IMG/VR virus record: IMGVR_UViG_3300033571_009404
Location: 1 to 64,000 of that record
DNA length: 64,000 nt
Direction: 5' to 3' (one strand)
Every line of letters begins with the position of its first letter. Position 1 is the stretch's first letter. The notes beneath the pieces are model-generated. The model was not told where the DNA came from. It made no database searches and saw nothing but the letters and a program-made list of their open reading frames with translations. Below, in pieces: positions 7,110-29,566 of this stretch. The position numbers and the translations under genes are program-made.

Positions 7110-8843
7110 ATGTTTTCTCATCCATTTTATTTCTTCTGGCAAAACAAGTCTCCGTTTTCCAATTGGTATATCCGGAACTTCAAAGTCAGAGAAATGATCT
7201 TCAATTGCGTTGAGCAATACATGATGTACCAGAAGGCTGTGTTCTTTGGTGATTTGGAAACTGCTAAGCTTATCATGGCAGAATCCAAACCAAAGAAGCA
7301 GAAAGAACTGGGACGTCAGGTCAAAGGCTTCAATCGCATTGATTGGGATTCTGTAGTTGAGGATATCCTCTACACGGCTATCAAGGCCAAGTTCACCCAG
7401 CATCGTGATCTGGGTGAATTGATGCTAAGCATCACTGCGAAAGAATTCGTCGAAGCATCTCCGTATGACCGGATCTATGGTGTGCGATTGTCAATGAATG
7501 ACCCTCGCATCCAGTCAAAGAAATTATGGCTCGGCCTAAACAAGCTTGGGCGTGTGCTGACCCGAGTACGTAACTGGCTGTATGTCAAGAAGAAAGGAAA
7601 GAACATGATCGATCTGTCCCCGCATCATCCAGAAGTCATTATTCTGGATTTGACAGATGTGTTTGCCGATGCACAACGGCGGCTGGCACATACGGGTGAT
7701 GTGAATCTGCTGTTGCCCTCGATGGTCAGTAGCATCATGACGTGTGTGGAATGTCGTGATCCCGATATGACCCGGTTGGAAGTCTATGTCTCTGACTTGA
7801 TCGAACAGTTCAAGAATGATGGCATGCCAACTGAGGATGGTGAAATTGCCGCAGCTATCGCTAAAGACATCGGACGTAAGCTTGTCTATGAGATCGAGAA
7901 GATCGGCGGTTACGATGAGAACGATAATTTCGATTACGATGTCTATCGTGTGGAAATCTCCGGAGCTGTGGTACTGACTCGTCTGGATCCTGTGGGCGCT
8001 CGTGCTCAAGAGAAGAGGAAAGAATGGTTTCCTGATCCGGAAGCTGTTGGTAAATCGATTTCTTCAGGTAGCAGGGTTGACCATATGGTCATGGTCGATG
8101 ACGACGGCAATCCAATCAAGACGTCTGTAGTGGATATCCCTGAACCCACTCAAGAACAGAAGGATCATATTGCTTCTTTCGAAGTTAAACTTCCTTCGCT
8201 TGAAGAAATGGAGAATCATCCGCATCAAGGATACTTCCAAGGCCAACACAATGTGCAATATGCTGCTAAGTTAGGAGAAGTAGTCACTCCTGAACAGCAG
8301 CTGCAGAACTACGAAGCACATGAGCGTCGTGTGGTTATCGAGGAGAATGTCCCGGCTGCTGGTTTCCGTAGTCGTACGGAGTACGATCTCCCCAGTGAAG
8401 ACTTTACTTCATCGACTGTTGAGTCCAATATCAGCAACAAAATCGATAAGATGCTTCATAGCCCTAAGTTCAATATGAAGTTTGCTCCTTGCGATGATCT
8501 GGGAGAAATCTCTGTCAGATTGAACGGTCAAACCATTCAGAATCCAACACCTGAACAATTGTCCGAAGTTGCCAATAAGTTGGGTTTCGATGCAGCTGAC
8601 GTCATCATGGGACAAGACAAAGGTTATCGTGAGGTTCCCTTGTCTGAAGTCAAAGAGTCTCCTTATAAAGAGATTCTCGACAATGCGTTCCAGGATCAGG
8701 AAAGGGTTATCATCAATGCAGCTCCACGCTACGTACCCCTTGGTATCGTAGACGGCGATCAACAACAACAGAAGTGGAAAGACACTACAACAGGGGAAGT
8801 GCTTACCAACGAAGAACGATTTAATCGAGTTTCAAAAGACTAA
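7110..8843 (+). CDS. NADAR (YbiA-like) domain fused to a 412-aa unknown region
   Basis: FSNWY, EQYMMYQKA, KELGRQV, AKFTQH, VEASPYDRIYG and GLNKLG motifs in aa 1-158. Confidence 0.85.
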   Translation: MFSHPFYFFWQNKSPFSNWYIRNFKVREMIFNCVEQYMMYQKAVFFGDLETAKLIMAESKPKKQKELGRQVKGFNRIDWDSVVEDILYTAIKAKFTQHRDLGELMLSITAKEFVEASPYDRIYGVRLSMNDPRIQSKKLWLGLNKLGRVLTRVRNWLYVKKKGKNMIDLSPHHPEVIILDLTDVFADAQRRLAHTGDVNLLLPSMVSSIMTCVECRDPDMTRLEVYVSDLIEQFKNDGMPTEDGEIAAAIAKDIGRKLVYEIEKIGGYDENDNFDYDVYRVEISGAVVLTRLDPVGARAQEKRKEWFPDPEAVGKSISSGSRVDHMVMVDDDGNPIKTSVVDIPEPTQEQKDHIASFEVKLPSLEEMENHPHQGYFQGQHNVQYAAKLGEVVTPEQQLQNYEAHERRVVIEENVPAAGFRSRTEYDLPSEDFTSSTVESNISNKIDKMLHSPKFNMKFAPCDDLGEISVRLNGQTIQNPTPEQLSEVANKLGFDAADVIMGQDKGYREVPLSEVKESPYKEILDNAFQDQERVIINAAPRYVPLGIVDGDQQQQKWKDTTTGEVLTNEERFNRVSKD

Positions 8844-8870: not shown

Positions 8871-9125
8871 ATGAGCGCTGTAAATCAGGGGACTGTTGTC
8901 CATCAGCAAACTCTGTTAAATGAGGACAACACCAAAGCAGCTACTTTGACTTATCGTAATGGTTCTAACATTCCAGCGGAGTGGGAGTTATCTCAGGATG
9001 GGGATTCTGAACGTAACTTCCTTACACTGGAATTGTACCTAGCGATCAAAGGCATTGCTTTGACCAGACAGGAATGTGGTTTGACACCGGTTGATACGGT
9101 GCAAGCTTCTTTGGAATTCGAATAG
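8871..9125 (+). CDS. Hypothetical protein
   Basis: ORF in operon, AGGGG SD. Confidence 0.6.
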   Translation: MSAVNQGTVVHQQTLLNEDNTKAATLTYRNGSNIPAEWELSQDGDSERNFLTLELYLAIKGIALTRQECGLTPVDTVQASLEFE

Positions 9126-9135
9126 GAATTGTGCG

Positions 9136-9903
9136 ATGGAAAAGAGATTGAAAATGAAGAAGGCGTCCTTCATTGTCTGCGAAGGCATGGATGGATCTGG
9201 TAAGACGACAGTGTCTAAGTATCTACTGGAGTTAATGGGTTTATTTGGCTATGATGTCAAGTGGACGCGTGAACCTGGTGGTACTCCACTGGCTGAAAGT
9301 ATCCGTAACCTGATACTGACAACTGAGATGGATTCTACTACTGAACTTCTGCTGTTTAACGCAGCACGTCGTGATCATGTAGAAAACCTGATCAAGCCGT
9401 CTTTAGCAAAGGACATCACAGTGGTATCGGATCGCTTTGTGGATTCGACCATTGCTTACCAGTGCTACGCTAATCAGCGTTCACCTCTTCATCAAGTACT
9501 ATCTCTGCACCAGACTTGTATCGATTTCGATCCTGACTATGTCATTTACCTTGACATTCTCCCTGAAGTAGCAGCAGCTCGTGCAAATCAGCGTGGCGCT
9601 GGTGACCGTTTCGACAACATGCCAGCCGACTATAAGAAGCGTCTGGAGATGGGGTACCAAGTAGGGATGCTCATGCATAAAGCTAGCACCTCTACTGAAG
9701 TCGTTACCATCGATGCCAATCAAAACCTACTCGATGTATTTGAGCAAGTGTTTAATTGGTTTGTTCGCTACTACTGCGCCACGCATCAACCTGCAGCGTC
9801 ATTCGTCTTTGATAATGAAAAGCATACTAAAGCGCTCGAAAACCCTGTACTCCAGGCGGCGTTAGAACAGCATCGTCAGCACTGGCGTCTTAACTTTAGC
9901 TAA
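9136..9903 (+). CDS. tmk: Thymidylate (dTMP) kinase
   Basis: EGMDGSGKTT P-loop, TREPGGT, SDRFVDSTIAYQ; start moved to ATG 9136 after AGGA. Confidence 0.95.
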   Translation: MEKRLKMKKASFIVCEGMDGSGKTTVSKYLLELMGLFGYDVKWTREPGGTPLAESIRNLILTTEMDSTTELLLFNAARRDHVENLIKPSLAKDITVVSDRFVDSTIAYQCYANQRSPLHQVLSLHQTCIDFDPDYVIYLDILPEVAAARANQRGAGDRFDNMPADYKKRLEMGYQVGMLMHKASTSTEVVTIDANQNLLDVFEQVFNWFVRYYCATHQPAASFVFDNEKHTKALENPVLQAALEQHRQHWRLNFS

Positions 9904-9919
9904 TACGGTAACGTCTACA

Positions 9920-10291
9920 ATGGATGAAAAATACGCATTCTTTGATGACAATGGTCGAGTAAAGGAAATTGAGTATCCGATCTTTACTAAACCATTCGAG
10001 AAAAAGGAACACTGGTTTATCAAGTTCTTGATCTGGACTGGTGCTTTAACTCGTCAGTATGAGTGGTTAAATTTCCATCAACGATACATCATGTTATCGT
10101 TAGCCAATCCCATGCGTTGGTCGATTGCGCTCATGATCCAGATCGATAGCTTAATCGATAGTAAGACTATTGACCCAAATACTCTGAGAGAGGTGAATCT
10201 CTTAATGCACGTGCATGGGGTGCCCGTTGCCCTTGCATGGTATCGTATCTTCGGATACAAGATTCCTATTAACTCAGAGGTGAGAGTATGA
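9920..10291 (+). CDS. Hypothetical protein (paralog of 10288)
   Basis: Shares PxF...H and V..LM....VPV....I.G patterns with the next gene. Confidence 0.7.
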   Translation: MDEKYAFFDDNGRVKEIEYPIFTKPFEKKEHWFIKFLIWTGALTRQYEWLNFHQRYIMLSLANPMRWSIALMIQIDSLIDSKTIDPNTLREVNLLMHVHGVPVALAWYRIFGYKIPINSEVRV

Positions 10292-13101: not shown

Positions 13102-13284
13102 ATGATGAAGAAAAGGAAACTGCGTTACAGACGCTGGCAAGTACCACGAGAAAGAGATCCGAACTTCCGTCGGATGTTTATCAAGTCGTGGCGTCGTGAA
13201 CATTCTCGTATTCGTTATCCCTTGATGTTCCGGGAATGCTACATGATCCATCCTGAGTATTCCAGCTACCTGTTACACGGTTAA
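13102..13284 (+). CDS. Small Arg-rich protein
   Basis: AAGGTG SD; MMKKRKLRYRR. Confidence 0.55.
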   Translation: MMKKRKLRYRRWQVPRERDPNFRRMFIKSWRREHSRIRYPLMFRECYMIHPEYSSYLLHG

Positions 13285-13319: not shown

Positions 13320-14183
13320 ATGCTGAAAGTTCAAGTCGATTACCACGATGATGCTTTGTTCGACAGCACAGACTTCGAGCCGAAGATCATTACTTTCCCT
13401 GGCGGGGAATGTCATGTGACTCTACCGGATGAATTGCTGGACAATCCACGTGCCCGTGCGTTTACCATTAAGACGCTGATCAAGAACGCCGACCACATCA
13501 TGCATTTGCTGATGGTTACAGACGCGATTCGTCGCCACTACGCGGGCTATCCGATTTTCCTACACATGCCGTACATTCCGTACGCACGTCAAGACCGCGT
13601 AGCCAACCACGGCGAGTCTTTGTCGGCTCGTGTGTTCTGTGATCTGATCAATGCTCAGAACTACGAAGTCGTCAGCGTCGCTGATCCGCACAGCCCGGTG
13701 GTGGAAGCGCTGCTGAACCGCATCGACGTGGTCGATCCGATTTACATGGTCGAAGAAGTGCTGCAAAGCGATCTCTTCAAGGACGGTGTGGCGCTGGTTG
13801 CACCGGACGCAGGTGCCCGAAAGCGTGTGCTGAATATGGCCATGGAAGTCAACGTCGAAGACGTGATCTTTGCTGACAAGGTACGCGATACCAAGACTGG
13901 CAAGATCACCGGTACCGTGGTCAACAACGAAGTTCCTCAAGGTAAAGCTATTCTGGTCGTGGATGACATCTGTGACGGTGGTCGTACCTTCCTGGAACTG
14001 GGTAAGGTCTTAAAGGAGAAGACCGACCAACCGCTGTACCTGTACATTACCCATGGCATCTTCAGCAAAGGTCTGGAAGAACTCGGTAAGTATTACGACC
14101 GTATCTTCACTGCCTACAACTGGAATGATGAAGAAGCCAACAATCCCCAACTGACCTTGATCAAGGAAGGAAATCTGCTGTGA
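13320..14183 (+). CDS. Ribose-phosphate pyrophosphokinase-like protein (probable ADPR-PP synthetase, Adps)
   Basis: FPGGE, PYIPYARQDR, DPHS, APDAGA and VDDICDGGRTF motifs; coupled to a Nampt-like gene. Confidence 0.9.
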   Translation: MLKVQVDYHDDALFDSTDFEPKIITFPGGECHVTLPDELLDNPRARAFTIKTLIKNADHIMHLLMVTDAIRRHYAGYPIFLHMPYIPYARQDRVANHGESLSARVFCDLINAQNYEVVSVADPHSPVVEALLNRIDVVDPIYMVEEVLQSDLFKDGVALVAPDAGARKRVLNMAMEVNVEDVIFADKVRDTKTGKITGTVVNNEVPQGKAILVVDDICDGGRTFLELGKVLKEKTDQPLYLYITHGIFSKGLEELGKYYDRIFTAYNWNDEEANNPQLTLIKEGNLL

Positions 14184-15883
14184 GCGAACAACAAGAAAAC
14201 ATCGTCGAGAAAGTTGCCAATGGTCTCGTGCCATTCAACCTGGCAGACTTCTACAAGACTGGTCACCCAGCCATGTATCCTCAGGGTACTGAAACCCTGG
14301 TGGCCAACTTTACCCCGCGCTCGGCCAAGTACGCTCCGGTACTGCCGGAATTGTTCGATAACAAGATCGTTTGGTTCGGCCTGCGTGGTTTCATCCAGGA
14401 ATGGCTGATCGATGTCTTCAATCGCGAGTTCTTCCAAAAACCCAAGGAAGAAGCCATCAAGAAGTACCGTCGTCGTATGGACACTTCTCTCGGTCCTGGT
14501 GCTGTCAGCATGAAGAAGCTGGAACTGCTCCATGATCTGGGTTACCTTCCGCTGGAAATTCGCGCCCTACCTGAAGGCGCTCGTGTGAACATCAAGGTAC
14601 CGCCGGTACTGTTCATCAACACCGCTGGCCCTGAACTGTCGTGGGTGGCTACCTACTTCGAAACTCTGATGTCCTGCGAAAGCTGGAAAATCTCGACGGT
14701 CGGTACCATTGCTTTCGAGTTCCACAAGCTGCTGACCTACTTCGCTGTGTCCACTGGCGCGCCTCTGGACTTTGTGCGTTGGCAAGGTCACGACTTCTCG
14801 TTCCGTGGCATGTCGGGTGTGCATGATGCAATGCGTACCTGCTCGGCTCACTTGCTGTCGTTCATGGGTACCGATACCATCCCGTCTATCGACTACCTGG
14901 AAGACTACTACGACGCCGATTCCGACAAGGAACTGGTGGGTGGTTCGATCCCAGCATCGGAACACAGTGTGATGGCTCTGCGCATTCTGCTGAAGCTGAA
15001 GGAACTGGCCAAGCTGCCGGAGAACGCAGGTCTGACTCACAAGCAACTACGTAAGGCAGCTGAGCTGGAAGTGGTGCGTGACTATGCCATCAAGGAATAC
15101 GACACTGGTCTGGTCTCCATGGTCTCGGATACCTTCGACTTCTGGAATGTGATCACTCACATCGCCAAGGTCCTGAAGCCTGAAATCATGCAACGCAAGC
15201 CGGATGTGTTCGGTAATGCCAAGGTCGTCTTCCGTCCTGATTCGGGTGATCCAGTGTACATCCTGACCGGTTACAAGAACAGTGAAATCGTTGCTAATGG
15301 CGATGGTACTTTCACTGTCAATGCAACTGGCAGAGTCATCCAAGATCACGAGCGTCGTGGTGCTGTGGAATGCCTGTGGGATATCTTCGGTGGTACCGAA
15401 ACCAGTCTCGGCTACAAGCTGCTGGATTCCCACGTCGGTCTGATCTACGGTGACTCGATCACTCTGCCGCGTGCTATGCGTATCCTGCGTCGTCTGCAAG
15501 ACAAGGGCTTCGCATCCACCAACGTAGTCTTCGGTATCGGTTCGTACACTTACAACATGCTCTCCCGTGACGTCTTCGGTTGGGCCATGAAGGCGGTGTA
15601 CGCGGTAGTCGATGGTGAGCCGGTTGAGATCTACAAGGATCCAGCAACTGACGACGGTATGAAGAAGTCGGCCAAGGGTCTGCTGCGTGTGGATAAGGTA
15701 GGTAACAACTACTTCCTGACGGAGAACTGCACCCCGGAAGAGTTCGAAGGCGGTGAACTCAAGCCGGTGTTCCGTAATGGTGAGATGTTGGTCAAGCCTA
15801 CCTTTAAGGAAGCCAAGGAACGTCTGCACCTTTCTTGGACGTGTCCGGAACCTAATAGCATCGTCTGGCAAGACGCTGCTTAA
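14180..15883 (+). CDS. Nicotinamide phosphoribosyltransferase-like protein (probable Namat)
   Basis: DFYKTGH, HDFSFRG, PASEHSV, VSDTFD, RPDSGDP, LIYGDSIT, KDPATD and KKSAKG motifs; GTGA overlap. Confidence 0.92.
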   Translation: MSEQQENIVEKVANGLVPFNLADFYKTGHPAMYPQGTETLVANFTPRSAKYAPVLPELFDNKIVWFGLRGFIQEWLIDVFNREFFQKPKEEAIKKYRRRMDTSLGPGAVSMKKLELLHDLGYLPLEIRALPEGARVNIKVPPVLFINTAGPELSWVATYFETLMSCESWKISTVGTIAFEFHKLLTYFAVSTGAPLDFVRWQGHDFSFRGMSGVHDAMRTCSAHLLSFMGTDTIPSIDYLEDYYDADSDKELVGGSIPASEHSVMALRILLKLKELAKLPENAGLTHKQLRKAAELEVVRDYAIKEYDTGLVSMVSDTFDFWNVITHIAKVLKPEIMQRKPDVFGNAKVVFRPDSGDPVYILTGYKNSEIVANGDGTFTVNATGRVIQDHERRGAVECLWDIFGGTETSLGYKLLDSHVGLIYGDSITLPRAMRILRRLQDKGFASTNVVFGIGSYTYNMLSRDVFGWAMKAVYAVVDGEPVEIYKDPATDDGMKKSAKGLLRVDKVGNNYFLTENCTPEEFEGGELKPVFRNGEMLVKPTFKEAKERLHLSWTCPEPNSIVWQDAA

Positions 15884-15887
15884 TTAG

Positions 15888-15925
15888 GGCATAAGGACCG
15901 GTGTGGGTAACTCCACACCGGTTTT
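15888..15925 (+). terminator. Hairpin/terminator preceded by GGCATAA tag
   Basis: ACCGGTGTGG-GTAACT-CCACACCGGT followed by TTT. Confidence 0.7.
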
Positions 15926-15943: not shown

Positions 15944-16543
15944 ATGGAAAACAATCTTATCGTATTAGACGGTGATGGTGTATTGGTCGACTACCATCAC
16001 GCCTATGCTCAGGCATGGGGTAAAGCATTCGGTGAAGTACCTGCAATCAAAGATCCCGATGCTTACTGGGCATTGGATCGTTACGATGTTCGTAAGCTTC
16101 ATGGTGATGAACTGGATCACTTCAAGAAGCATATGGACTATGAATTCTGGGCTACCATGCCCGCCATGCCTGGTGCTGTAGAGGCATGTCAAAAACTGGT
16201 AGATGCAGGTTACAAATTGATCTGTGTAACCGCATTGGAAGATGAACACAAATCTGCGCGCTGGAAGAATCTGTTAGATCTGGGTATGCCTCTGGAAGGT
16301 ATAGTTTGTACAGGACATGGGAATGATACGGCCAGTCCCAAGGCATCAGTCTTAAGTGTCTTGAATCCGGTGGCATTCGCAGATGACTTCGTGCACTATA
16401 TGCGCGGCATTCCACCACACATCCATGCAGCTTTGATCATGCGTTCTAAGAACGGTACACCGAACGTCGGTCCTGATCTTAAGTTAGCTCATTCTCAACA
16501 TGCTGATATTCTTAGCTTTGCGGAATATTGGGTCAATCGTTAA
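15944..16543 (+). CDS. HAD-superfamily phosphatase (5'(3')-nucleotidase-like)
   Basis: LDGDGVLVD motif I, PAMPGA, CVT motif II, K, FADD motif IV. Confidence 0.85.
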   Translation: MENNLIVLDGDGVLVDYHHAYAQAWGKAFGEVPAIKDPDAYWALDRYDVRKLHGDELDHFKKHMDYEFWATMPAMPGAVEACQKLVDAGYKLICVTALEDEHKSARWKNLLDLGMPLEGIVCTGHGNDTASPKASVLSVLNPVAFADDFVHYMRGIPPHIHAALIMRSKNGTPNVGPDLKLAHSQHADILSFAEYWVNR

Positions 16544-16547
16544 CCCG

Positions 16548-16579
16548 GAAGGGGAGTTTTGCGACTCCCTTTCTTTTTT
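16548..16579 (+). terminator. Intrinsic terminator
   Basis: GAAGGGGAGTT-TTGC-GACTCCCTTTC followed by T6. Confidence 0.8.
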
Positions 16580-24363: not shown

Positions 24364-26846
<2,483 letters not shown>

Positions 26847-27482: not shown

Positions 27483-27866
27483 ATGCAATTCGAAAGCATG
27501 GTCAGGAAGCCTGAAGAAATCATTCCAGGGAATATTCTCTGGCGGGTTCAAGTCACTCTGAATGAAGACGGTAGCGTAAATGTTGCCGCCCCATACAAAG
27601 TGATTCCTCGCACTGAAGCTAAGCAACTGTCGGATACTCAATATTTCGTCGGTATCCGTAACGTCATGGGCGGATTCATTATCCCTCTCGCCCTGGACGC
27701 ATTTGCTGTTGGTCACAGTGAGGATTCAGATGAGTTTCGGTTCACTCATTCCCGGTTGTTCCGCAAACGTAAGGATGCGATCAACTACGGGCGTGAGATG
27801 CAATCCTATCAACCTCCCTTAGAAGAAATGAAGTATCATTTCACCATCAAAGGAGATGAAAAGTGA
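27483..27866 (+). CDS. Hypothetical protein
   Basis: AAGGAG SD. Confidence 0.75.
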   Translation: MQFESMVRKPEEIIPGNILWRVQVTLNEDGSVNVAAPYKVIPRTEAKQLSDTQYFVGIRNVMGGFIIPLALDAFAVGHSEDSDEFRFTHSRLFRKRKDAINYGREMQSYQPPLEEMKYHFTIKGDEK

Positions 27867-29566
27867 AAGCACCGAAACCCAAGTCAGAACCCATCAAGGA
27901 TTTCATGACAATGGCGCAAGTCATTGGCAAAGACACCCTGCCTGAAACATCCCAAAACAACAAGGAGCAACAAGCTATGCAAATGCAATCGAATGTGAAC
28001 ATCATCGACACCGACTTCGTCAACCGCGACTGGCTGTGCCGTATCGATCCTGATGCCGAGATGCAAGCCAACATCGTGAATCTGATGGCAGACCGCCGTC
28101 CGTTCACGGTCAAGGAAATCGGCGACGTCTTCGAATTCTTCGGCGACGCTGGTGATCGTGTGAAGTCCGCGCATGTCATGCTGCAGATGAATGCCAAGGG
28201 TTTCTTCAAGACCGTCTCCGGTGGCAACATCGAGATGTACATCCTGAAGGATCGTTTGCCTGGCATGGATCGCCCGAAGCAACCGAAGCTGTTCCGTACT
28301 CCTGATTACTTCGATCGTGATCCGATCGGCGAGATCAAGCGTGCTGATGGCGTCGACATGGCGATCTTCAAGATCCTGTTGTCCGATGGCGAAAAGCGCA
28401 CCGCACAAGAACTGCGTGCTCTGCTCTATCCCTTCGGCTTCACGGCTAATGAAATCTCTGGCAAGCTGAAGACCCTGATGCTGGGGTCCAGTGGCGATGT
28501 CTGGATCGAACGCATCCAACGTGGTTCCGATGTCTGGTACACGGTCAAGAAGGGCTGGAACCTGGCTCGCTTCATCAAGGCACGCAAGGGCAAGCCATCC
28601 GTCGTTTACACGGGTGACGAGCCGGAACTGCCTGCAGCAAAGATCGATGACAAGCAAGAGTCTCTGACTCCGGCAGTCACCGGTCGTGCTGGTACGCACG
28701 TGTCTGTCAGCGAAGTTCAAGCTGCATCTCAGGAGGAAGCTGTGGAAACCAACCAAGTCGACCTGGTCGTGACTGCCAAGGACACGATGGATCAAGCGAT
28801 CTGGAAGGTTACGCAAGACCGCGCAACCTACCTGGTCTCTGAAGTCGCTGCTCTGATCGAAGACTTCGGCTTCAACAAGGGCACTGTCGGTGTGCGCATG
28901 GCCAAGCTGGCTGAAATGGGTTGGTTCACGCGTACTCCTGAGGGTCGTGCTTTCAAGTACACCATGGTGGAAGGTACTGCTTTCCCTATGGCGCAACTTG
29001 AAGTGGTCAAGCCGACTTCGCAAGTTCAGTCTGAACCTGCTGAAGGTAACAAGGTCGAAACCAAGGCACAAGAAGCCATCGTCACCACCAAGGCCGGTCC
29101 GAAGGTCGTGGCTCTGGATGAAGTCCAGAAACCGCGTATCAGCGTGACCGAACTGGCTCAAGAACTGGATGTGACGCCTACTGGCCTGATGTTCTACATC
29201 AAGTCGCGCGGTTTCACCGGTGTCCTGGACATCGATACCCAGTTGACCATCGAACACGCTGCTGCATTGCGTGTTAACTTCAACAAGAACGATGCAAAGG
29301 AAATCGATATGGGTACTGTCACCAATCTGGCAGATGCAGTGAAGAACGACCAAGAACAACCGGCTCTGTTCACCATGATCGTCCAGATCAAGGGTGTGAA
29401 CTTCAGCCTGGTTGAACTGAAGGAACTGACTGTGGAACTGGACGAAGCCATTTCGTTCCTGACCAAGGTCAAGTCCCTGGATGCGAAGATCACCATCAAG
29501 ACCATCCCGCTGTCGCTGGATGAAATGAAGGAACTCGCAGAACGCATCCGCGAACTGAAGCTGTAA
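27863..29566 (+). CDS. Multi-domain nucleic-acid-binding protein: three winged-helix-like repeats plus an IF2_N-like domain
   Basis: Repeats of form D.AI.K...D......E...L...GF....; RISVTELAQELDVTP; alternative start ATG 27977 has an AAGGAG SD. Confidence 0.7.
   Translation: MKAPKPKSEPIKDFMTMAQVIGKDTLPETSQNNKEQQAMQMQSNVNIIDTDFVNRDWLCRIDPDAEMQANIVNLMADRRPFTVKEIGDVFEFFGDAGDRVKSAHVMLQMNAKGFFKTVSGGNIEMYILKDRLPGMDRPKQPKLFRTPDYFDRDPIGEIKRADGVDMAIFKILLSDGEKRTAQELRALLYPFGFTANEISGKLKTLMLGSSGDVWIERIQRGSDVWYTVKKGWNLARFIKARKGKPSVVYTGDEPELPAAKIDDKQESLTPAVTGRAGTHVSVSEVQAASQEEAVETNQVDLVVTAKDTMDQAIWKVTQDRATYLVSEVAALIEDFGFNKGTVGVRMAKLAEMGWFTRTPEGRAFKYTMVEGTAFPMAQLEVVKPTSQVQSEPAEGNKVETKAQEAIVTTKAGPKVVALDEVQKPRISVTELAQELDVTPTGLMFYIKSRGFTGVLDIDTQLTIEHAAALRVNFNKNDAKEIDMGTVTNLADAVKNDQEQPALFTMIVQIKGVNFSLVELKELTVELDEAISFLTKVKSLDAKITIKTIPLSLDEMKELAERIRELKL

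What the first reader, a model, noticed from the sequence alone, without database searches (positions are those of the whole stretch)
13320..15883. NARP1-type NAD+ reconstitution operon (Adps-like + Namat-like)
Seen: a PRPP-synthetase-like gene overlaps (GTGA) a Nampt-like gene, and no NMN adenylyltransferase is present in the window. Known: this two-gene arrangement matches the phage NARP1 pathway, in which ADP-ribose is pyrophosphorylated and joined to nicotinamide to rebuild NAD+ depleted by SIR2/TIR-type defences such as Thoeris and DSR. Inference: an anti-defence module that would also sustain the phage's own NAD-dependent ligase (24373). The system is described; its context with NADAR, HAD and LigA is the added interest.
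Basis: partly seen in the sequence, partly recalled or inferred. Interest (0 to 1): 0.6.

Follow-up and report, generated by a model that had tools for sequence, protein, structure and literature searches.

The report
Jumbo-phage NARP1 NAD+ rebuilding gene pair
Two overlapping genes in a 310-kb phage genome are a typical, untested member of the known NARP1 pathway, by which phages rebuild NAD+ from the fragments left by bacterial NAD+-destroying defences; it is a fairly ordinary find.

Summary
Window 13320-14183 (+) encodes a 287-aa PRPP-synthetase-like protein. It overlaps by GTGA a 567-aa Nampt-like gene at 14180-15883 (+). The window is the start of a complete 310,114-bp jumbo phage record. 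That genome has no NMN adenylyltransferase domain (PF01467), no second Nampt, no second Prs and no Nudix.

The NARP1 reading is supported.
- In trees, both proteins fall on the Adps/Namat side of strongly supported splits, away from canonical Prs and from KVP40-type Nampt.
- The Nampt-like protein is closest, by sequence and by predicted fold, to the solved SPbetaL1 Namat.
- It keeps the catalytic core and the adenine "selectivity clamp", with one deviation: Met where the consensus has an aromatic residue.
- The Prs-like protein keeps Lys185, the acceptor residues, the Adps-type hairpin and PP loop, and lacks the Prs C-terminal module.

The nearest kin of both proteins (62% and 70% identity) lie in betaproteobacterial chromosomes, in NrtR-controlled "prs-nadV" operons. 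The phage copy has no NrtR and no NrtR operator. The proposed functional context is weak: the HAD gene is an NT5C-type nucleotidase rarely found beside NARP1, NADAR lies 4.5 kb away, and LigA's products are not NARP1 substrates.

This is a new member of a known kind.

The parts
13320..14183 (+). adps-like gene (287 aa, P0001): PRPP-synthetase-fold enzyme predicted to pyrophosphorylate ADP-ribose to ADPR-PP
   Evidence: PF13793 + PF00156 and phrog_619 at 1e-86. It scores below the cut-off of every canonical Prs equivalog and of the other subfamily models. It lies in the Namat-associated clade, split from canonical Prs at SH-like 97-98. R90, H124, D163, K187, D215-D219 and F224 match ICP1 Adps R87, H121, D161, K185, D212-D216 and F221, and the C-terminal Prs module is missing.
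14180..15883 (+). namat-like gene (567 aa, GTG start, P0002): Nampt-fold enzyme predicted to join ADPR-PP and nicotinamide into NAD+
   Evidence: PF04095 and phrog_448 at 6.5e-172. Best PDB sequence match is SPbetaL1 Namat 9w5x at 4e-124, against 1e-47 for mammalian NAMPT. The AF2 model (pLDDT 94.4) is best matched by 9w5x, TM 0.94. It sits in the Adps-associated clade, split from KVP40-type Nampt at 100. Clamp residues are K50-Y51 and GSYTYNMLSRD at 454-464.
14164..14183 (+). Shine-Dalgarno-like AAGGAAGGA (14164-14172) and GTGA start/stop overlap (14180-14183): translational coupling of the two genes
   Evidence: Read directly from the sequence. The Duganella homologues show the same 4-base overlap (9147-10004 / 10001-11698 in L003).
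15894..15925 (+). Strong stem-loop immediately after the namat stop, followed by UUUU: possible (leaky) terminator that closes the two-gene unit
   Evidence: RNA fold gives -23 kcal/mol, z = -4.7, and 0 of 200 shuffles fold as well. It missed the terminator scan only because its T-run is short.
15944..16543 (+). HAD-superfamily, NT5C-type hydrolase (199 aa, P0361). It is a neighbour and may be co-transcribed, but is probably not part of the pathway.
   Evidence: PF00702 and PF06941. DGDGV motif I. Atlas clusters are NT5C-type 5'-nucleotidases. No homologue was found beside NARP1 in 83 loci, and 1 of 94 flanking ORFs is NT5C.
16547..16574 (+). Intrinsic-terminator-like hairpin plus T-run after the HAD gene
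   Evidence: 12-pair stem followed by TTTTTTGTCTT. Fold gives -17.3 kcal/mol, z = -3.5.
7110..8843 (+). NADAR-domain protein (577 aa; NADAR in residues 8-157, the rest unassigned). This is context only.
   Evidence: PF08719 at 1.9e-42. PDB 8bau at 8e-11. NADAR genes abut NARP1 genes in 4 of 80 viral loci.
24373..26406 (+). NAD+-dependent DNA ligase LigA (677 aa), an NAD+ consumer of the phage. This is context only.
   Evidence: PF01653, PF03120, BRCT, HhH and the Ia domain PF22745.

Best explanation
The two genes are a NARP1 module. It is expressed as a translationally coupled pair from a phage promoter that I could not identify.

Step 1 (inferred from homology): the Prs-fold enzyme Adps transfers the beta,gamma-pyrophosphate of ATP to the 1'' hydroxyl of the distal ribose of ADP-ribose, giving ADPR-PP + AMP. 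Lys187, on a KVRDTKTG hairpin, acts as the key catalytic residue.

Step 2 (inferred from homology): the Nampt-fold enzyme Namat, a head-to-tail dimer, displaces the pyrophosphate with nicotinamide and yields NAD+ directly. Specificity for the adenylated donor comes from an adenine clamp made of Lys50/Tyr51 of one protomer and Tyr456, Met460, Ser462 and Asp464 of the other.

The substrates, ADPR and nicotinamide, are exactly what SIR2-, TIR- and DSR-type defences make from NAD+. The module would therefore restore the NAD+ pool during infection without any NMN adenylyltransferase, which the phage lacks.

Shown here: gene structure, family and clade membership, signature residues, fold, and absence of NMNAT. 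Inferred: both reactions, the substrate preference, and the anti-defence role.
For: - Gene structure and overlap.
- The genome is complete and has no PF01467, no second Nampt or Prs, and no Nudix. KVP40 serves as a positive control for PF01467.
- Namat tree: a 100-supported split between KVP40-like/NadM-linked Nampt and the Adps-associated clade, with P0002 deep inside the latter.
- Adps tree: canonical Prs split off at 97-98, with P0001 inside the Namat-adjacent clade and with the same partners as P0002.
- 74 of 80 related IMG/VR loci carry an Adps-like ORF beside the Namat; the other 6 are cut at a contig end. 40 of 46 of their records lack PF01467.
- The NAD+-contact residues of SPbetaL1 Namat map onto P0002 as F206, S207, R209, D232, A259, H262, R352, D354, G424, D425, G454, S455, Y456, R463, D464, D23 and Y25 (residue list from PMC12774641).
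- Motif GS[YF]T[YF] is present, against GG[GA]LLQ in all 18 Nampt-clade sequences in which the motif was found, of 19 examined.
- Adps residues and the DDICDGGRTF loop are identical to the FelixO1/Bas63-type Adps, and the Prs C-terminal helices are absent (features from PMC13586617).
- The predicted fold is closest to the Namat crystal structures.
Against: - No assay exists for this protein pair or for any member of its subclade.
- Clamp position 7 is Met460 instead of the consensus aromatic (Tyr396 in SPbetaL1), and Thr398 is Ser. However, about 10 of 79 Adps-associated viral Namats also carry Met, Leu or Val there.
- Adps Phe92 and Phe223 of ICP1 are Ala95 and Glu226 here.
- Namat enzymes keep Nampt activity in vitro (PMC12774641).
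- H. ducreyi NadV, a working Nampt with no Adps partner, nests inside the same clade. Clade membership alone therefore does not fix the substrate.
- The closest kin are bacterial chromosomal 'prs-nadV' operons, long read as PRPP/NMN salvage (PMC2330246).
- The host and its defences are unknown; only metagenomic runs hold the sequence.
Confidence: 0.78

Rival explanations
1. Conventional salvage. The first enzyme is a dedicated PRPP synthetase and the second a nicotinamide phosphoribosyltransferase that makes NMN. The host's own NMN adenylyltransferase (NadR, NadM or NadD) or PncC finishes NAD+ synthesis.
For: Pfam and NCBIfam names. Namat enzymes retain about half of human Nampt activity on PRPP (PMC12774641). 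H. ducreyi NadV lies in the same clade and works as a Nampt. The homologous bacterial operons were interpreted this way (PMC2330246). Clamp position 7 is not aromatic.
Against: P0001 lies outside canonical Prs and fails the cut-off of every canonical Prs equivalog and of the other subfamily models. HdNadV has lost its partner gene and the clamp aromatics (GAQTYQRNTRD; SCL SNEQ), whereas P0002 keeps both. Phage Nampts that make NMN form a separate clade and travel with an NMNAT (KVP40; 94% according to 10.1101/2024.02.11.579819), and this phage has none. Bas63, with the same gene type, countered defence in a pncC nadR double mutant (same preprint).
Confidence: 0.12
2. Same NARP1 chemistry but a housekeeping purpose. 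The pair recycles ADP-ribose and nicotinamide released by the phage's own NAD+-consuming or ADP-ribose-processing enzymes (for example ADP-ribosylation reversed by NADAR or Macro proteins) to keep NAD+ up for LigA and host metabolism, rather than to counter a defence system.
For: The closest kin are non-mobile-looking bacterial operons under the ADPR-sensing repressor NrtR, which suggests a homeostatic role there. The phage encodes NADAR, a Macro protein and LigA. The pair sits among nucleotide-metabolism genes: thymidylate kinase, NT5C-type hydrolase and thymidylate synthase.
Against: I did not search the genome for a phage ADP-ribosyltransferase or NADase. Every NARP1 tested so far gives anti-defence phenotypes (10.1101/2024.02.11.579819; PMC12774641; PMC13586617). 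The two roles are not exclusive.
Confidence: 0.1
3. A three-gene unit, adps-namat-HAD. The HAD phosphatase would prepare a phosphorylated ADPR derivative (such as ADPR-1''-phosphate made by RES-type defences) for NARP1, as a non-Macro analogue of the NARP1-AP phosphatase Adpp.
For: The HAD gene starts 60 nt after namat on the same strand, and the clearest terminator follows the HAD gene. The HAD catalytic motifs are intact. NARP1 operons extended by a phosphatase exist (10.64898/2026.01.28.702374). One other viral locus also has an NT5C-type gene beside NARP1.
Against: A strong hairpin separates namat from the HAD gene. The protein is of the NT5C deoxyribonucleotidase type, common in phage nucleotide metabolism. 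No homologue sits beside NARP1 in 83 loci. Known Adpp enzymes are Macro-domain proteins, and none lies within two genes here.
Confidence: 0.05

Closest known systems
NARP1 of phages Bas63 (JohannRWettstein), SPbetaL1, FADO and ICP1 (Adps + Namat; 10.1101/2024.02.11.579819, PMC12774641, PMC13586617)
   Same: Adjacent, same-strand adps then namat. Both proteins lie in the same clades. The catalytic residues, the K-Y type SCL as in ICP1 and Bas63-type Namats, the GS[YF]T[YF] SCH start and the DDICDGGRTF loop (as in FelixO1) are all present. There is no NMNAT in the genome.
   Different: Identity is only 39-44% (Namat) and 31-32% (Adps) to ICP1 and FelixO1. Clamp position 7 is Met and Thr398 is Ser. 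Two well-folded inserts, about residues 267-300 (helical hairpin) and 366-391 (beta hairpin), make the protein about 75 aa longer than SPbetaL1 Namat. The host phage is a 310-kb jumbo phage.
Bacterial NrtR-regulated 'prs-nadV' operons (Chromobacterium, Shewanella, Acinetobacter; PMC2330246) and bacterial NARP1 (Paenibacillus foliorum; PMC12774641)
   Same: These are the nearest relatives of both proteins: 62% and 70% identity, in Duganella, Chromobacterium, Paraburkholderia, Ralstonia and Burkholderia. They share a 99-100 supported subclade in both trees, the same inserts, the same M/L at clamp position 7, and in Duganella the same 4-base overlap.
   Different: All 5 bacterial loci examined have an NrtR regulator gene beside the pair. 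Candidate TTAGTTG-N7-CAACTAA boxes lie upstream of the Adps-like gene in all five, clearly in tandem in four. The phage has no Nudix/NrtR gene and no such box near the pair.
NARP2 of Vibrio phage KVP40 (NadV Nampt + NatV NMNAT/Nudix)
   Same: Same Nampt fold and catalytic core, and the same end product, NAD+.
   Different: 29% identity. It lies on the other side of the 100-supported split. Its motif is GGGLLQQLDRD without aromatics. It needs an NMNAT, which is present in KVP40 and absent here. KVP40 has no Adps.
Haemophilus ducreyi NadV (plasmid pNAD1; PDB 9ke8/9keo)
   Same: 36-38% identical, the second-best solved structure. It nests inside the Adps-associated clade.
   Different: It is an orphan gene with no Adps on the 5.6-kb plasmid. 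The clamp aromatics are replaced: GAQTYQRNTRD, with SNEQ in the SCL. It is described as an NMN-forming enzyme in the PDB titles.
NARP1-AP (Adps-Adpp-Namat with a Macro-domain ADPR-1''-phosphatase; 10.64898/2026.01.28.702374)
   Same: Core Adps + Namat, and a hydrolase gene lies next to the pair.
   Different: The neighbour is a HAD/NT5C enzyme, not a Macro domain. The genome's only Macro gene lies at about 240.6 kb, far from the pair.

Membership tests
NARP1 (Adps + Namat pathway) | The Prs-like protein belongs to the Adps clade, separate from canonical Prs | tested here: met
   FastTree with 88 rows: Prs on one side at 97. IQ-TREE LG+C20 with 41 rows: 98. P0001 scores 123 bits on TIGR01251, against 407 bits for the canonical Prs of Duganella.
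NARP1 (Adps + Namat pathway) | A Namat homologue within 10 genes of adps | tested here: met
   The genes are adjacent on the same strand with a 4-base overlap.
NARP1 (Adps + Namat pathway) | The Nampt-like protein belongs to the Adps-associated clade, not the NMNAT-associated Nampt clade | tested here: met
   A 100-supported split in three trees, with P0002 nested deep in the Adps-associated side.
NARP1 (Adps + Namat pathway) | The genome lacks an NMN adenylyltransferase (this distinguishes it from NARP2 and NARP3) | tested here: met
   PF01467 gives no hit at E<=1 in the complete 310-kb record. The KVP40 controls are positive.
NARP1 (Adps + Namat pathway) | ADPR + ATP gives ADPR-PP; ADPR-PP + nicotinamide gives NAD+; the pair rescues phage from NAD+-depleting defence | not testable with these tools
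   This needs purified proteins with LC-MS, and plaque assays.
Namat (PMC12774641) | Nampt-like catalytic core (F189, R192, D215, H245, R306, D308, and D13'/Y15' of SPbetaL1) | tested here: met
   F206, R209, D232, H262, R352, D354, D23 and Y25 are aligned and invariant.
Namat (PMC12774641) | [quoted passage not shown] | tested here: inconclusive
   GSYTYNMLSRD at 454-464. Position 3 is Tyr (met). Position 7 is Met (not aromatic) and Thr is replaced by Ser. Met, Leu or Val at position 7 also occurs in about 10 of 79 Adps-linked viral Namats. All 18 Nampt-clade sequences in which the motif was found, of 19 examined, read GG[GA]LLQ.
Namat (PMC12774641) | SCL loop supplies an adenine-stacking residue: third residue Arg, or Lys/Tyr followed by an aromatic fourth residue | tested here: met
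   S48-A49-K50-Y51. ICP1 has HGKY and FelixO1 has SDKW.
Adps (PMC13586617) | Catalytic Lys185 on the beta-hairpin, and acceptor residues R87, H121, D161, D212, D213, D216 | tested here: met
   K187 (in KVRDTKTGKI), R90, H124, D163, D215, D216 and D219.
Adps (PMC13586617) | Remodelled PP loop and donor site (ICP1 C215-S220, F221, F223) | tested here: inconclusive
   DDICDGGRTFLE: C218 and F224 are kept, A218/A219/S220 become G/R/T, and F223 becomes E226. The loop is identical to FelixO1 (Bas63 genus) Adps, and differs from E. coli Prs DDMIDTGGTL.
Adps (PMC13586617) | Aromatic contacts to the ADPR adenine (F18 of the neighbouring protomer, F92) | tested here: inconclusive
   F92 aligns with Ala95, and with Met in FelixO1 and Cys in the bacterial kin. 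F18 aligns with Phe19, but that stretch of the alignment is poor.
Adps (PMC13586617) | Loss of the C-terminal alpha11-alpha12 filament/regulatory module of Prs | tested here: met
   P0001 ends about 20 residues before E. coli Prs, like ICP1 and FelixO1 Adps.
NARP1-AP (10.64898/2026.01.28.702374) | A Macro-domain phosphatase (PF01661, PF14519 or PF20016) within two genes of the pair | tested here: not met
   The flanking ORFs have no Macro hit. The only PF01661 hit in the genome is at 240,632-240,934.
NARP2 (KVP40 type) | KVP40-clade Nampt plus an NMNAT in the genome | tested here: not met
NARP3 (PMC13464706) | PnuC-like transporter plus a NadR-like kinase/adenylyltransferase | tested here: not met
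   No PF01467 domain anywhere in the genome. PnuC itself was not searched.
NrtR-regulated bacterial prs-nadV operon (PMC2330246) | Adjacent NrtR (Nudix + winged helix) gene and palindromic NrtR operators upstream | tested here: not met
   No PF00293 hit in the genome. No TTAGTTG-N7-CAACTAA box within 3 mismatches near the pair; there are 2 hits elsewhere in 64 kb against 2.5 expected by chance.

The most novel reading that the evidence does not exclude
The phage pair belongs to the same lineage as the ADP-ribose-induced, NrtR-repressed 'prs-nadV' operons of Betaproteobacteria. Either the phage captured the pair from such an operon or donated it; the direction is unresolved.

If so, those long-known operons would be an inducible bacterial NARP1. 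That would answer the 2008 puzzle of why a second 'Prs' is co-regulated with NadV by an ADPR sensor. The phage would run the same module with the repressor and operator stripped off.

A further, less likely twist is that the adjacent NT5C-type HAD phosphatase feeds the pathway as a non-Macro analogue of Adpp.
Probability: 0.5. Interest if true: 0.45.

Novelty: new member of a known kind. Interest (0 to 1): 0.3.

Why it matters
NARP1 is an established counter-defence, reported in about 4% of sequenced phages, and Nampt-like genes occur in about a third of jumbo phages. Another instance changes little on its own.

Its value is as a well-documented, divergent example.
- It comes from a complete jumbo phage with no NMNAT, so the pair must either make NAD+ directly or depend on the host.
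- Its clamp carries a natural Tyr-to-Met change, and the protein has two extra structured inserts. These test how strict the published Namat signature is.
- It links phage NARP1 to the NrtR/ADP-ribose-controlled bacterial 'prs-nadV' operons, which suggests an ADPR-inducible bacterial version of the pathway.
- The placement of H. ducreyi NadV inside the Namat clade is a caution for annotation: clade membership without the Adps partner and the clamp residues does not establish ADPR-PP use.

Tried and rejected
- HAD gene as a conserved NARP1 partner: rejected. There is no homologue beside NARP1 in 80 viral and 3 bacterial loci, and only 1 of 94 flanking ORFs is NT5C-type. The protein has no PDB sequence hit and looks like a deoxyribonucleotidase.
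- NrtR control of the phage copy: rejected. I derived the box from five bacterial upstream regions and found none near the pair. The genome has no Nudix gene.
- Recent transfer seen in base composition: not supported. GC3 of the two genes is 0.63 and 0.64, against an ORF mean of 0.54 (sd 0.08), which puts them at the 86th-90th percentile only.
- Sigma-70 promoter upstream: none found on the + strand. This is uninformative for a jumbo phage.
- Near-identical phages: megablast found only a 321-base, 75% match. The best phage protein match is 50% identical.
- Close KVP40 NadV relatives in IMG/VR: only 2 loci, so the Nampt clade was taken from the word-based protein search instead.
- Synteny with the other jumbo contig that carries a related pair (L025, 324 kb): only the pair itself and one unrelated gene match.
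- Spread in the host order: apart from the Duganella genome used as the centre, a homologue (50% identity) was found in only 1 of 120 evenly sampled genomes. At class level, 2 of 40 had only distant Nampt-type matches. The operon is patchy.
- Sequencing runs: only metagenomes hold the sequence, one study holds it in full, and there are no RNA runs.
- The 'careful' IQ-TREE run did not finish in time, so the 'quick' LG+C20 trees with SH-aLRT support are reported.
- Locus L109 comes from an unpublished genome (G088).
- The large representative protein search and complex prediction were not needed. Published pull-downs show no stable Adps-Namat complex.


Full report
**What is there**

The window is bases 1-64000 of a single-contig virus record of 310,114 bp. 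The record has direct terminal repeats and is rated complete, so it is a jumbo phage. Nearly all long ORFs run on the + strand.

At the reported place there are two ORFs: 13320-14183 (ATG, 287 aa, P0001) and 14180-15883 (GTG, 567 aa, P0002). They overlap by GTGA. GTG 14180 is the first start codon after the in-frame stop at 14129-14131, and it has AAGGAAGGA 8 nt upstream. The next Met would remove residues that bind nicotinamide. The start and the translational coupling are therefore sound.

- P0001 hits Pribosyltran_N, Pribosyltran and phrog_619 (1e-86). On NCBIfam it only just passes the broad ribP_PPkin subfamily model (123 bits, cut-off 113). It fails every canonical Prs equivalog and the other subfamily models by wide margins.
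- P0002 hits NAPRTase (2e-35), phrog_448 (6.5e-172) and NF006629 (501 bits).

**The rest of the genome**

A six-frame search of the whole record finds the following.
- No CTP_transf_like domain, the fold of all known NMN adenylyltransferases, at E<=1. The same search finds KVP40's two such genes.
- One Nampt-like and one Prs-like gene only.
- No Nudix.
- One Macro domain far away, at 240.6 kb.
- One NADAR gene at 7110-8843.

**What defines NARP1**

Osterman et al. (10.1101/2024.02.11.579819) defined NARP1 as follows.
- An Adps clade separate from Prs, 97% of whose members sit next to a Namat.
- A Namat clade separate from the NMNAT-linked Nampt clade typified by KVP40 (NARP2).

Lan et al. (PMC12774641) solved SPbetaL1 Namat. 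They defined an adenine 'selectivity clamp' with two parts: an SCL loop carrying a stacking residue, and an SCH motif GSX-phi-X-phi-X-phi-TRD with aromatics at positions 3 and 7.

Liu et al. (PMC13586617) solved ICP1 Adps. They named Lys185, the acceptor residues R87/H121/D161/D212/D213/D216, the remodelled PP loop, the aromatic contacts F18/F92, and the loss of the Prs C-terminal helices.

**Tests on the Nampt-like protein**

Against the PDB by sequence, the best match is SPbetaL1 Namat (9w5x/9w5w) at 4e-124. Next comes H. ducreyi NadV (9ke8) at 7e-106, then mammalian NAMPT at about 1e-47, and Xanthomonas Nampt at 1e-37. An AlphaFold2 model (pLDDT 94.4, pTM 0.93) gives the same order by Foldseek:

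| Match | TM (target) | Identity |
|---|---|---|
| SPbetaL1 Namat | 0.94-0.95 | 40-41% |
| H. ducreyi NadV | about 0.94 | 36% |
| Mammalian NAMPT | about 0.90 | 26% |

The NAD+-contacting residues of SPbetaL1 map onto P0002 as follows: F206, S207, R209, D232, A259, R352, D354, G424, D425, S426 (Ala in SPbetaL1), G454, S455, D23' and Y25'. The catalytic histidine is H262.

In the clamp, R40 of SPbetaL1 corresponds to K50-Y51. This is the Lys-plus-aromatic variant also seen in ICP1 (K-Y) and FelixO1/Bas63-type (K-W) Namats. The SCH reads GSYTYNMLSRD. Tyr456 stands for Phe392, and Arg463 and Asp464 are kept. Met460 replaces Tyr396 and Ser462 replaces Thr398.

In my sample, all 18 Nampt-clade sequences in which the motif was found (of 19 examined) read GG[GA]LLQ..[DNH]RD. 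The 79 Adps-linked viral Namats in which it was found read S[YF]T[YF][QNE]..., and about 10 of them also have Met, Leu or Val at position 7. I score the SCH feature as inconclusive rather than failed. The published single mutants in the clamp lose only 1.3-1.7-fold activity.

Relative to SPbetaL1, P0002 has two inserts: about residues 267-300, just after the catalytic His, and 366-391. Both are modelled with high confidence, as a helical hairpin and a beta hairpin. Their role is unknown.

**Tests on the Prs-like protein**

I aligned P0001 with ICP1 Adps, FelixO1 Adps (the same genus as Bas63), bacterial kin and E. coli Prs.
- Kept: R90, H124, D163, K187, D215, D216, I217, C218, D219 and F224.
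- The hairpin reads KVRDTKTGKI, against KIRDVKTGDI in ICP1 and DK-RRPRANVS in E. coli Prs.
- The PP loop DDICDGGRTF is identical to FelixO1.
- The protein ends before the Prs alpha11-alpha12 module.
- Not kept: F92 is Ala95 and F223 is Glu226. Neither is conserved in FelixO1 either.

**Phylogeny and context of relatives**

I collected 80 IMG/VR loci related to P0002. Of these, 74 carry an Adps-like ORF next to the Namat, almost always just upstream. The other 6 are cut at a contig end. Of 46 of their records searched, 40 lack PF01467.

Namat trees:
- A FastTree of 116 rows and two IQ-TREE (LG+C20) trees of 48 and 45 rows put the KVP40-like Nampt proteins on one side of a 100-supported long branch. 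That side includes a Ralstonia megaplasmid NadV encoded next to nadM.
- P0002 sits deep within the other, Adps-associated side.

Adps trees:
- Canonical Prs (E. coli, Duganella and four other genomes) separates at 97-98.
- P0001 sits inside the Namat-adjacent clade.

In both families the query falls in the same 99-100 supported subclade. That subclade holds betaproteobacterial proteins and two viral contigs, L025 (324 kb) and L043 (93 kb). The pair has therefore evolved as a unit.

**A caution from H. ducreyi NadV**

The classical NadV of H. ducreyi plasmid pNAD1 has no Adps partner, yet it nests inside the Adps-associated clade, next to SPbeta-like Bacillus Namats. It has lost the clamp aromatics: GAQTYQRNTRD in the SCH and SNEQ in the SCL. 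Clade membership alone does not prove ADPR-PP use. What supports the Namat call for P0002 is the combination of clade, retained partner and retained clamp.

**Nearest kin are bacterial**

The best phage match to P0002 is only 50% identical. The closest proteins overall are 62% (Adps) and 70% (Namat) identical. They come from Duganella, Chromobacterium, Paraburkholderia, Achromobacter, Burkholderia and Ralstonia, often on megabase contigs, and the same contigs appear in both hit lists.

- In all five loci examined, the pair lies beside an NrtR gene (Nudix + WHD_NrtR).
- Candidate 21-bp boxes, TTAGTTG-N7-CAACTAA, lie upstream of the Adps-like gene in all five, and they are clearly in tandem in four.
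- This is the 'nrtR-prs-nadV' operon of Rodionov et al. 2008 (PMC2330246). They showed that ADP-ribose releases NrtR from the operator, and they noted that the purpose of a second, co-regulated Prs was unexplained.
- Duganella has a canonical Prs (407 bits) as well as the paralog (114 bits).
- The operon is patchy. Apart from the Duganella genome used as the centre, a homologue (50% identity) was found in only 1 of 120 evenly sampled genomes of the order.

Neither Osterman et al. nor Lan et al. mention NrtR by name. The former allude to ADPR-dependent regulation, and the latter show that a Paenibacillus NARP1 is active.

The phage copy has no NrtR gene and no such box. Its GC3 is only mildly above the genome mean. 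The direction and date of transfer are open.

**Neighbourhood in the window**

- Upstream lie a thymidylate kinase (9091-9903), several unassigned ORFs and a small basic ORF (13102-13284).
- Directly after the namat stop there is a strong hairpin at 15894-15925 (-23 kcal/mol, z -4.7) followed by UUUU.
- Next comes a 199-aa HAD hydrolase of the NT5C type with an intact DxDxV motif.
- A clear terminator follows at 16547-16574.
- Further on are thymidylate synthase, two GNATs and a complete NAD+-dependent ligase.

The HAD gene has no homologue beside NARP1 in 83 loci. Among 94 ORFs lying between or just after adps/namat in the viral loci, the commonest families are Nuc_deoxyri_tr2 (4) and NADAR (3), with NT5C once. 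NADAR abuts NARP1 genes in L080, L096, L102 and L066. The NADAR association with phage NAD-salvage genes is already described (PMC9503650). LigA converts NAD+ to AMP and NMN (established enzymology), not to ADPR and nicotinamide, so NARP1 cannot recycle its products. It can only keep the pool filled.

**Verdict**

The interpretation as a NARP1-type Adps/Namat pair is supported as far as sequence, structure prediction, phylogeny and genome content can take it, and I give it a confidence of 0.78. The main rival, plain PRPP/NMN salvage completed by the host, gets 0.12. A housekeeping role with the same chemistry is not exclusive of the anti-defence role.

It is not NARP1-AP, NARP2 or NARP3. It is a new, divergent member of a known kind. 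The points worth keeping are the kinship with NrtR-controlled bacterial operons, the natural Met variant of the clamp, and the HdNadV caution. The enzymatic and phenotypic tests listed under next steps would settle it.

Noticed in passing
L003:8344-11698, L005:8279-11689, L113:2296-5713, L114:1560-4936, L115:2949-8361: In five betaproteobacterial genomes, the closest homologues of the phage pair lie beside an NrtR (Nudix + winged-helix) regulator gene. TTAGTTG-N7-CAACTAA boxes lie upstream of the Adps-like gene, in tandem in four of the five. This is the ADP-ribose-derepressed 'prs-nadV' operon of Rodionov 2008, which now looks like an ADPR-inducible bacterial NARP1. The NARP1 papers I read do not name NrtR.
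   Followed up: partly
L116:3828-5315 (H. ducreyi plasmid pNAD1): The classical NadV of H. ducreyi has no Adps partner and sits on a 5.6-kb plasmid with phage-like genes. It nests inside the Adps-associated Namat clade, next to SPbeta-like Bacillus Namats (55% identity), but has lost the adenine-clamp aromatics. It looks like a Namat lineage that reverted to plain Nampt use.
   Followed up: partly
L005:11772-12676: In Chromobacterium piscinae, an Xre-type antitoxin and a RES-domain toxin pair lie immediately downstream of the NrtR-Adps-Namat operon. RES toxins of this kind degrade NAD+.
   Followed up: no
L096:5525-5989, L102:3723-4244, L080:5867-6352, L066:10047-10550: NADAR-domain genes sit between adps and namat, or directly after namat, in four of 80 viral NARP1 loci. 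Nucleoside 2-deoxyribosyltransferase-like genes (PF15891) occur beside NARP1 in four. These are possible accessory enzymes that feed ADP-ribose to the pathway.
   Followed up: partly
window 7110-8843: The NADAR protein is 577 aa long, but only residues 8-157 match NADAR. The C-terminal ~420 residues have no Pfam, PHROG or PDB sequence match.
   Followed up: no
window 13102-13284: A 60-codon ORF encodes a very basic peptide (rich in Arg and Lys). It has a good Shine-Dalgarno-like AAAGGTGAG upstream and ends 35 nt before adps. It may be a small gene at the head of the transcription unit.
   Followed up: no
window 27863-29566: A second ORF of exactly 567 aa (GTG start) is unrelated to Namat. It has only weak PaaX and winged-helix hits. 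The equal length is a coincidence.
   Followed up: partly
L117:2859-5410 (Ralstonia solanacearum megaplasmid) versus L114: The Ralstonia genus carries both systems in different records: a nadM-nadV (NMNAT/Nudix + Nampt-clade) operon, and in another strain the NrtR-Adps-Namat operon. Only the latter is related to the phage pair.
   Followed up: partly
G000:C1:83242-83694 versus L025:2524-2976: A ~151-aa stretch is 85% identical between this phage and the 324-kb IMG/VR contig that carries the next-closest viral NARP1 pair. No other synteny is seen around the pair.
   Followed up: no
G000:C1:240632-240934 (-): The genome's only Macro-domain ORF (161 aa) lies outside the window, on the opposite strand, far from the NARP1 pair. 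Whether it could act in trans as an ADPR-1''-phosphatase is unknown.
   Followed up: no
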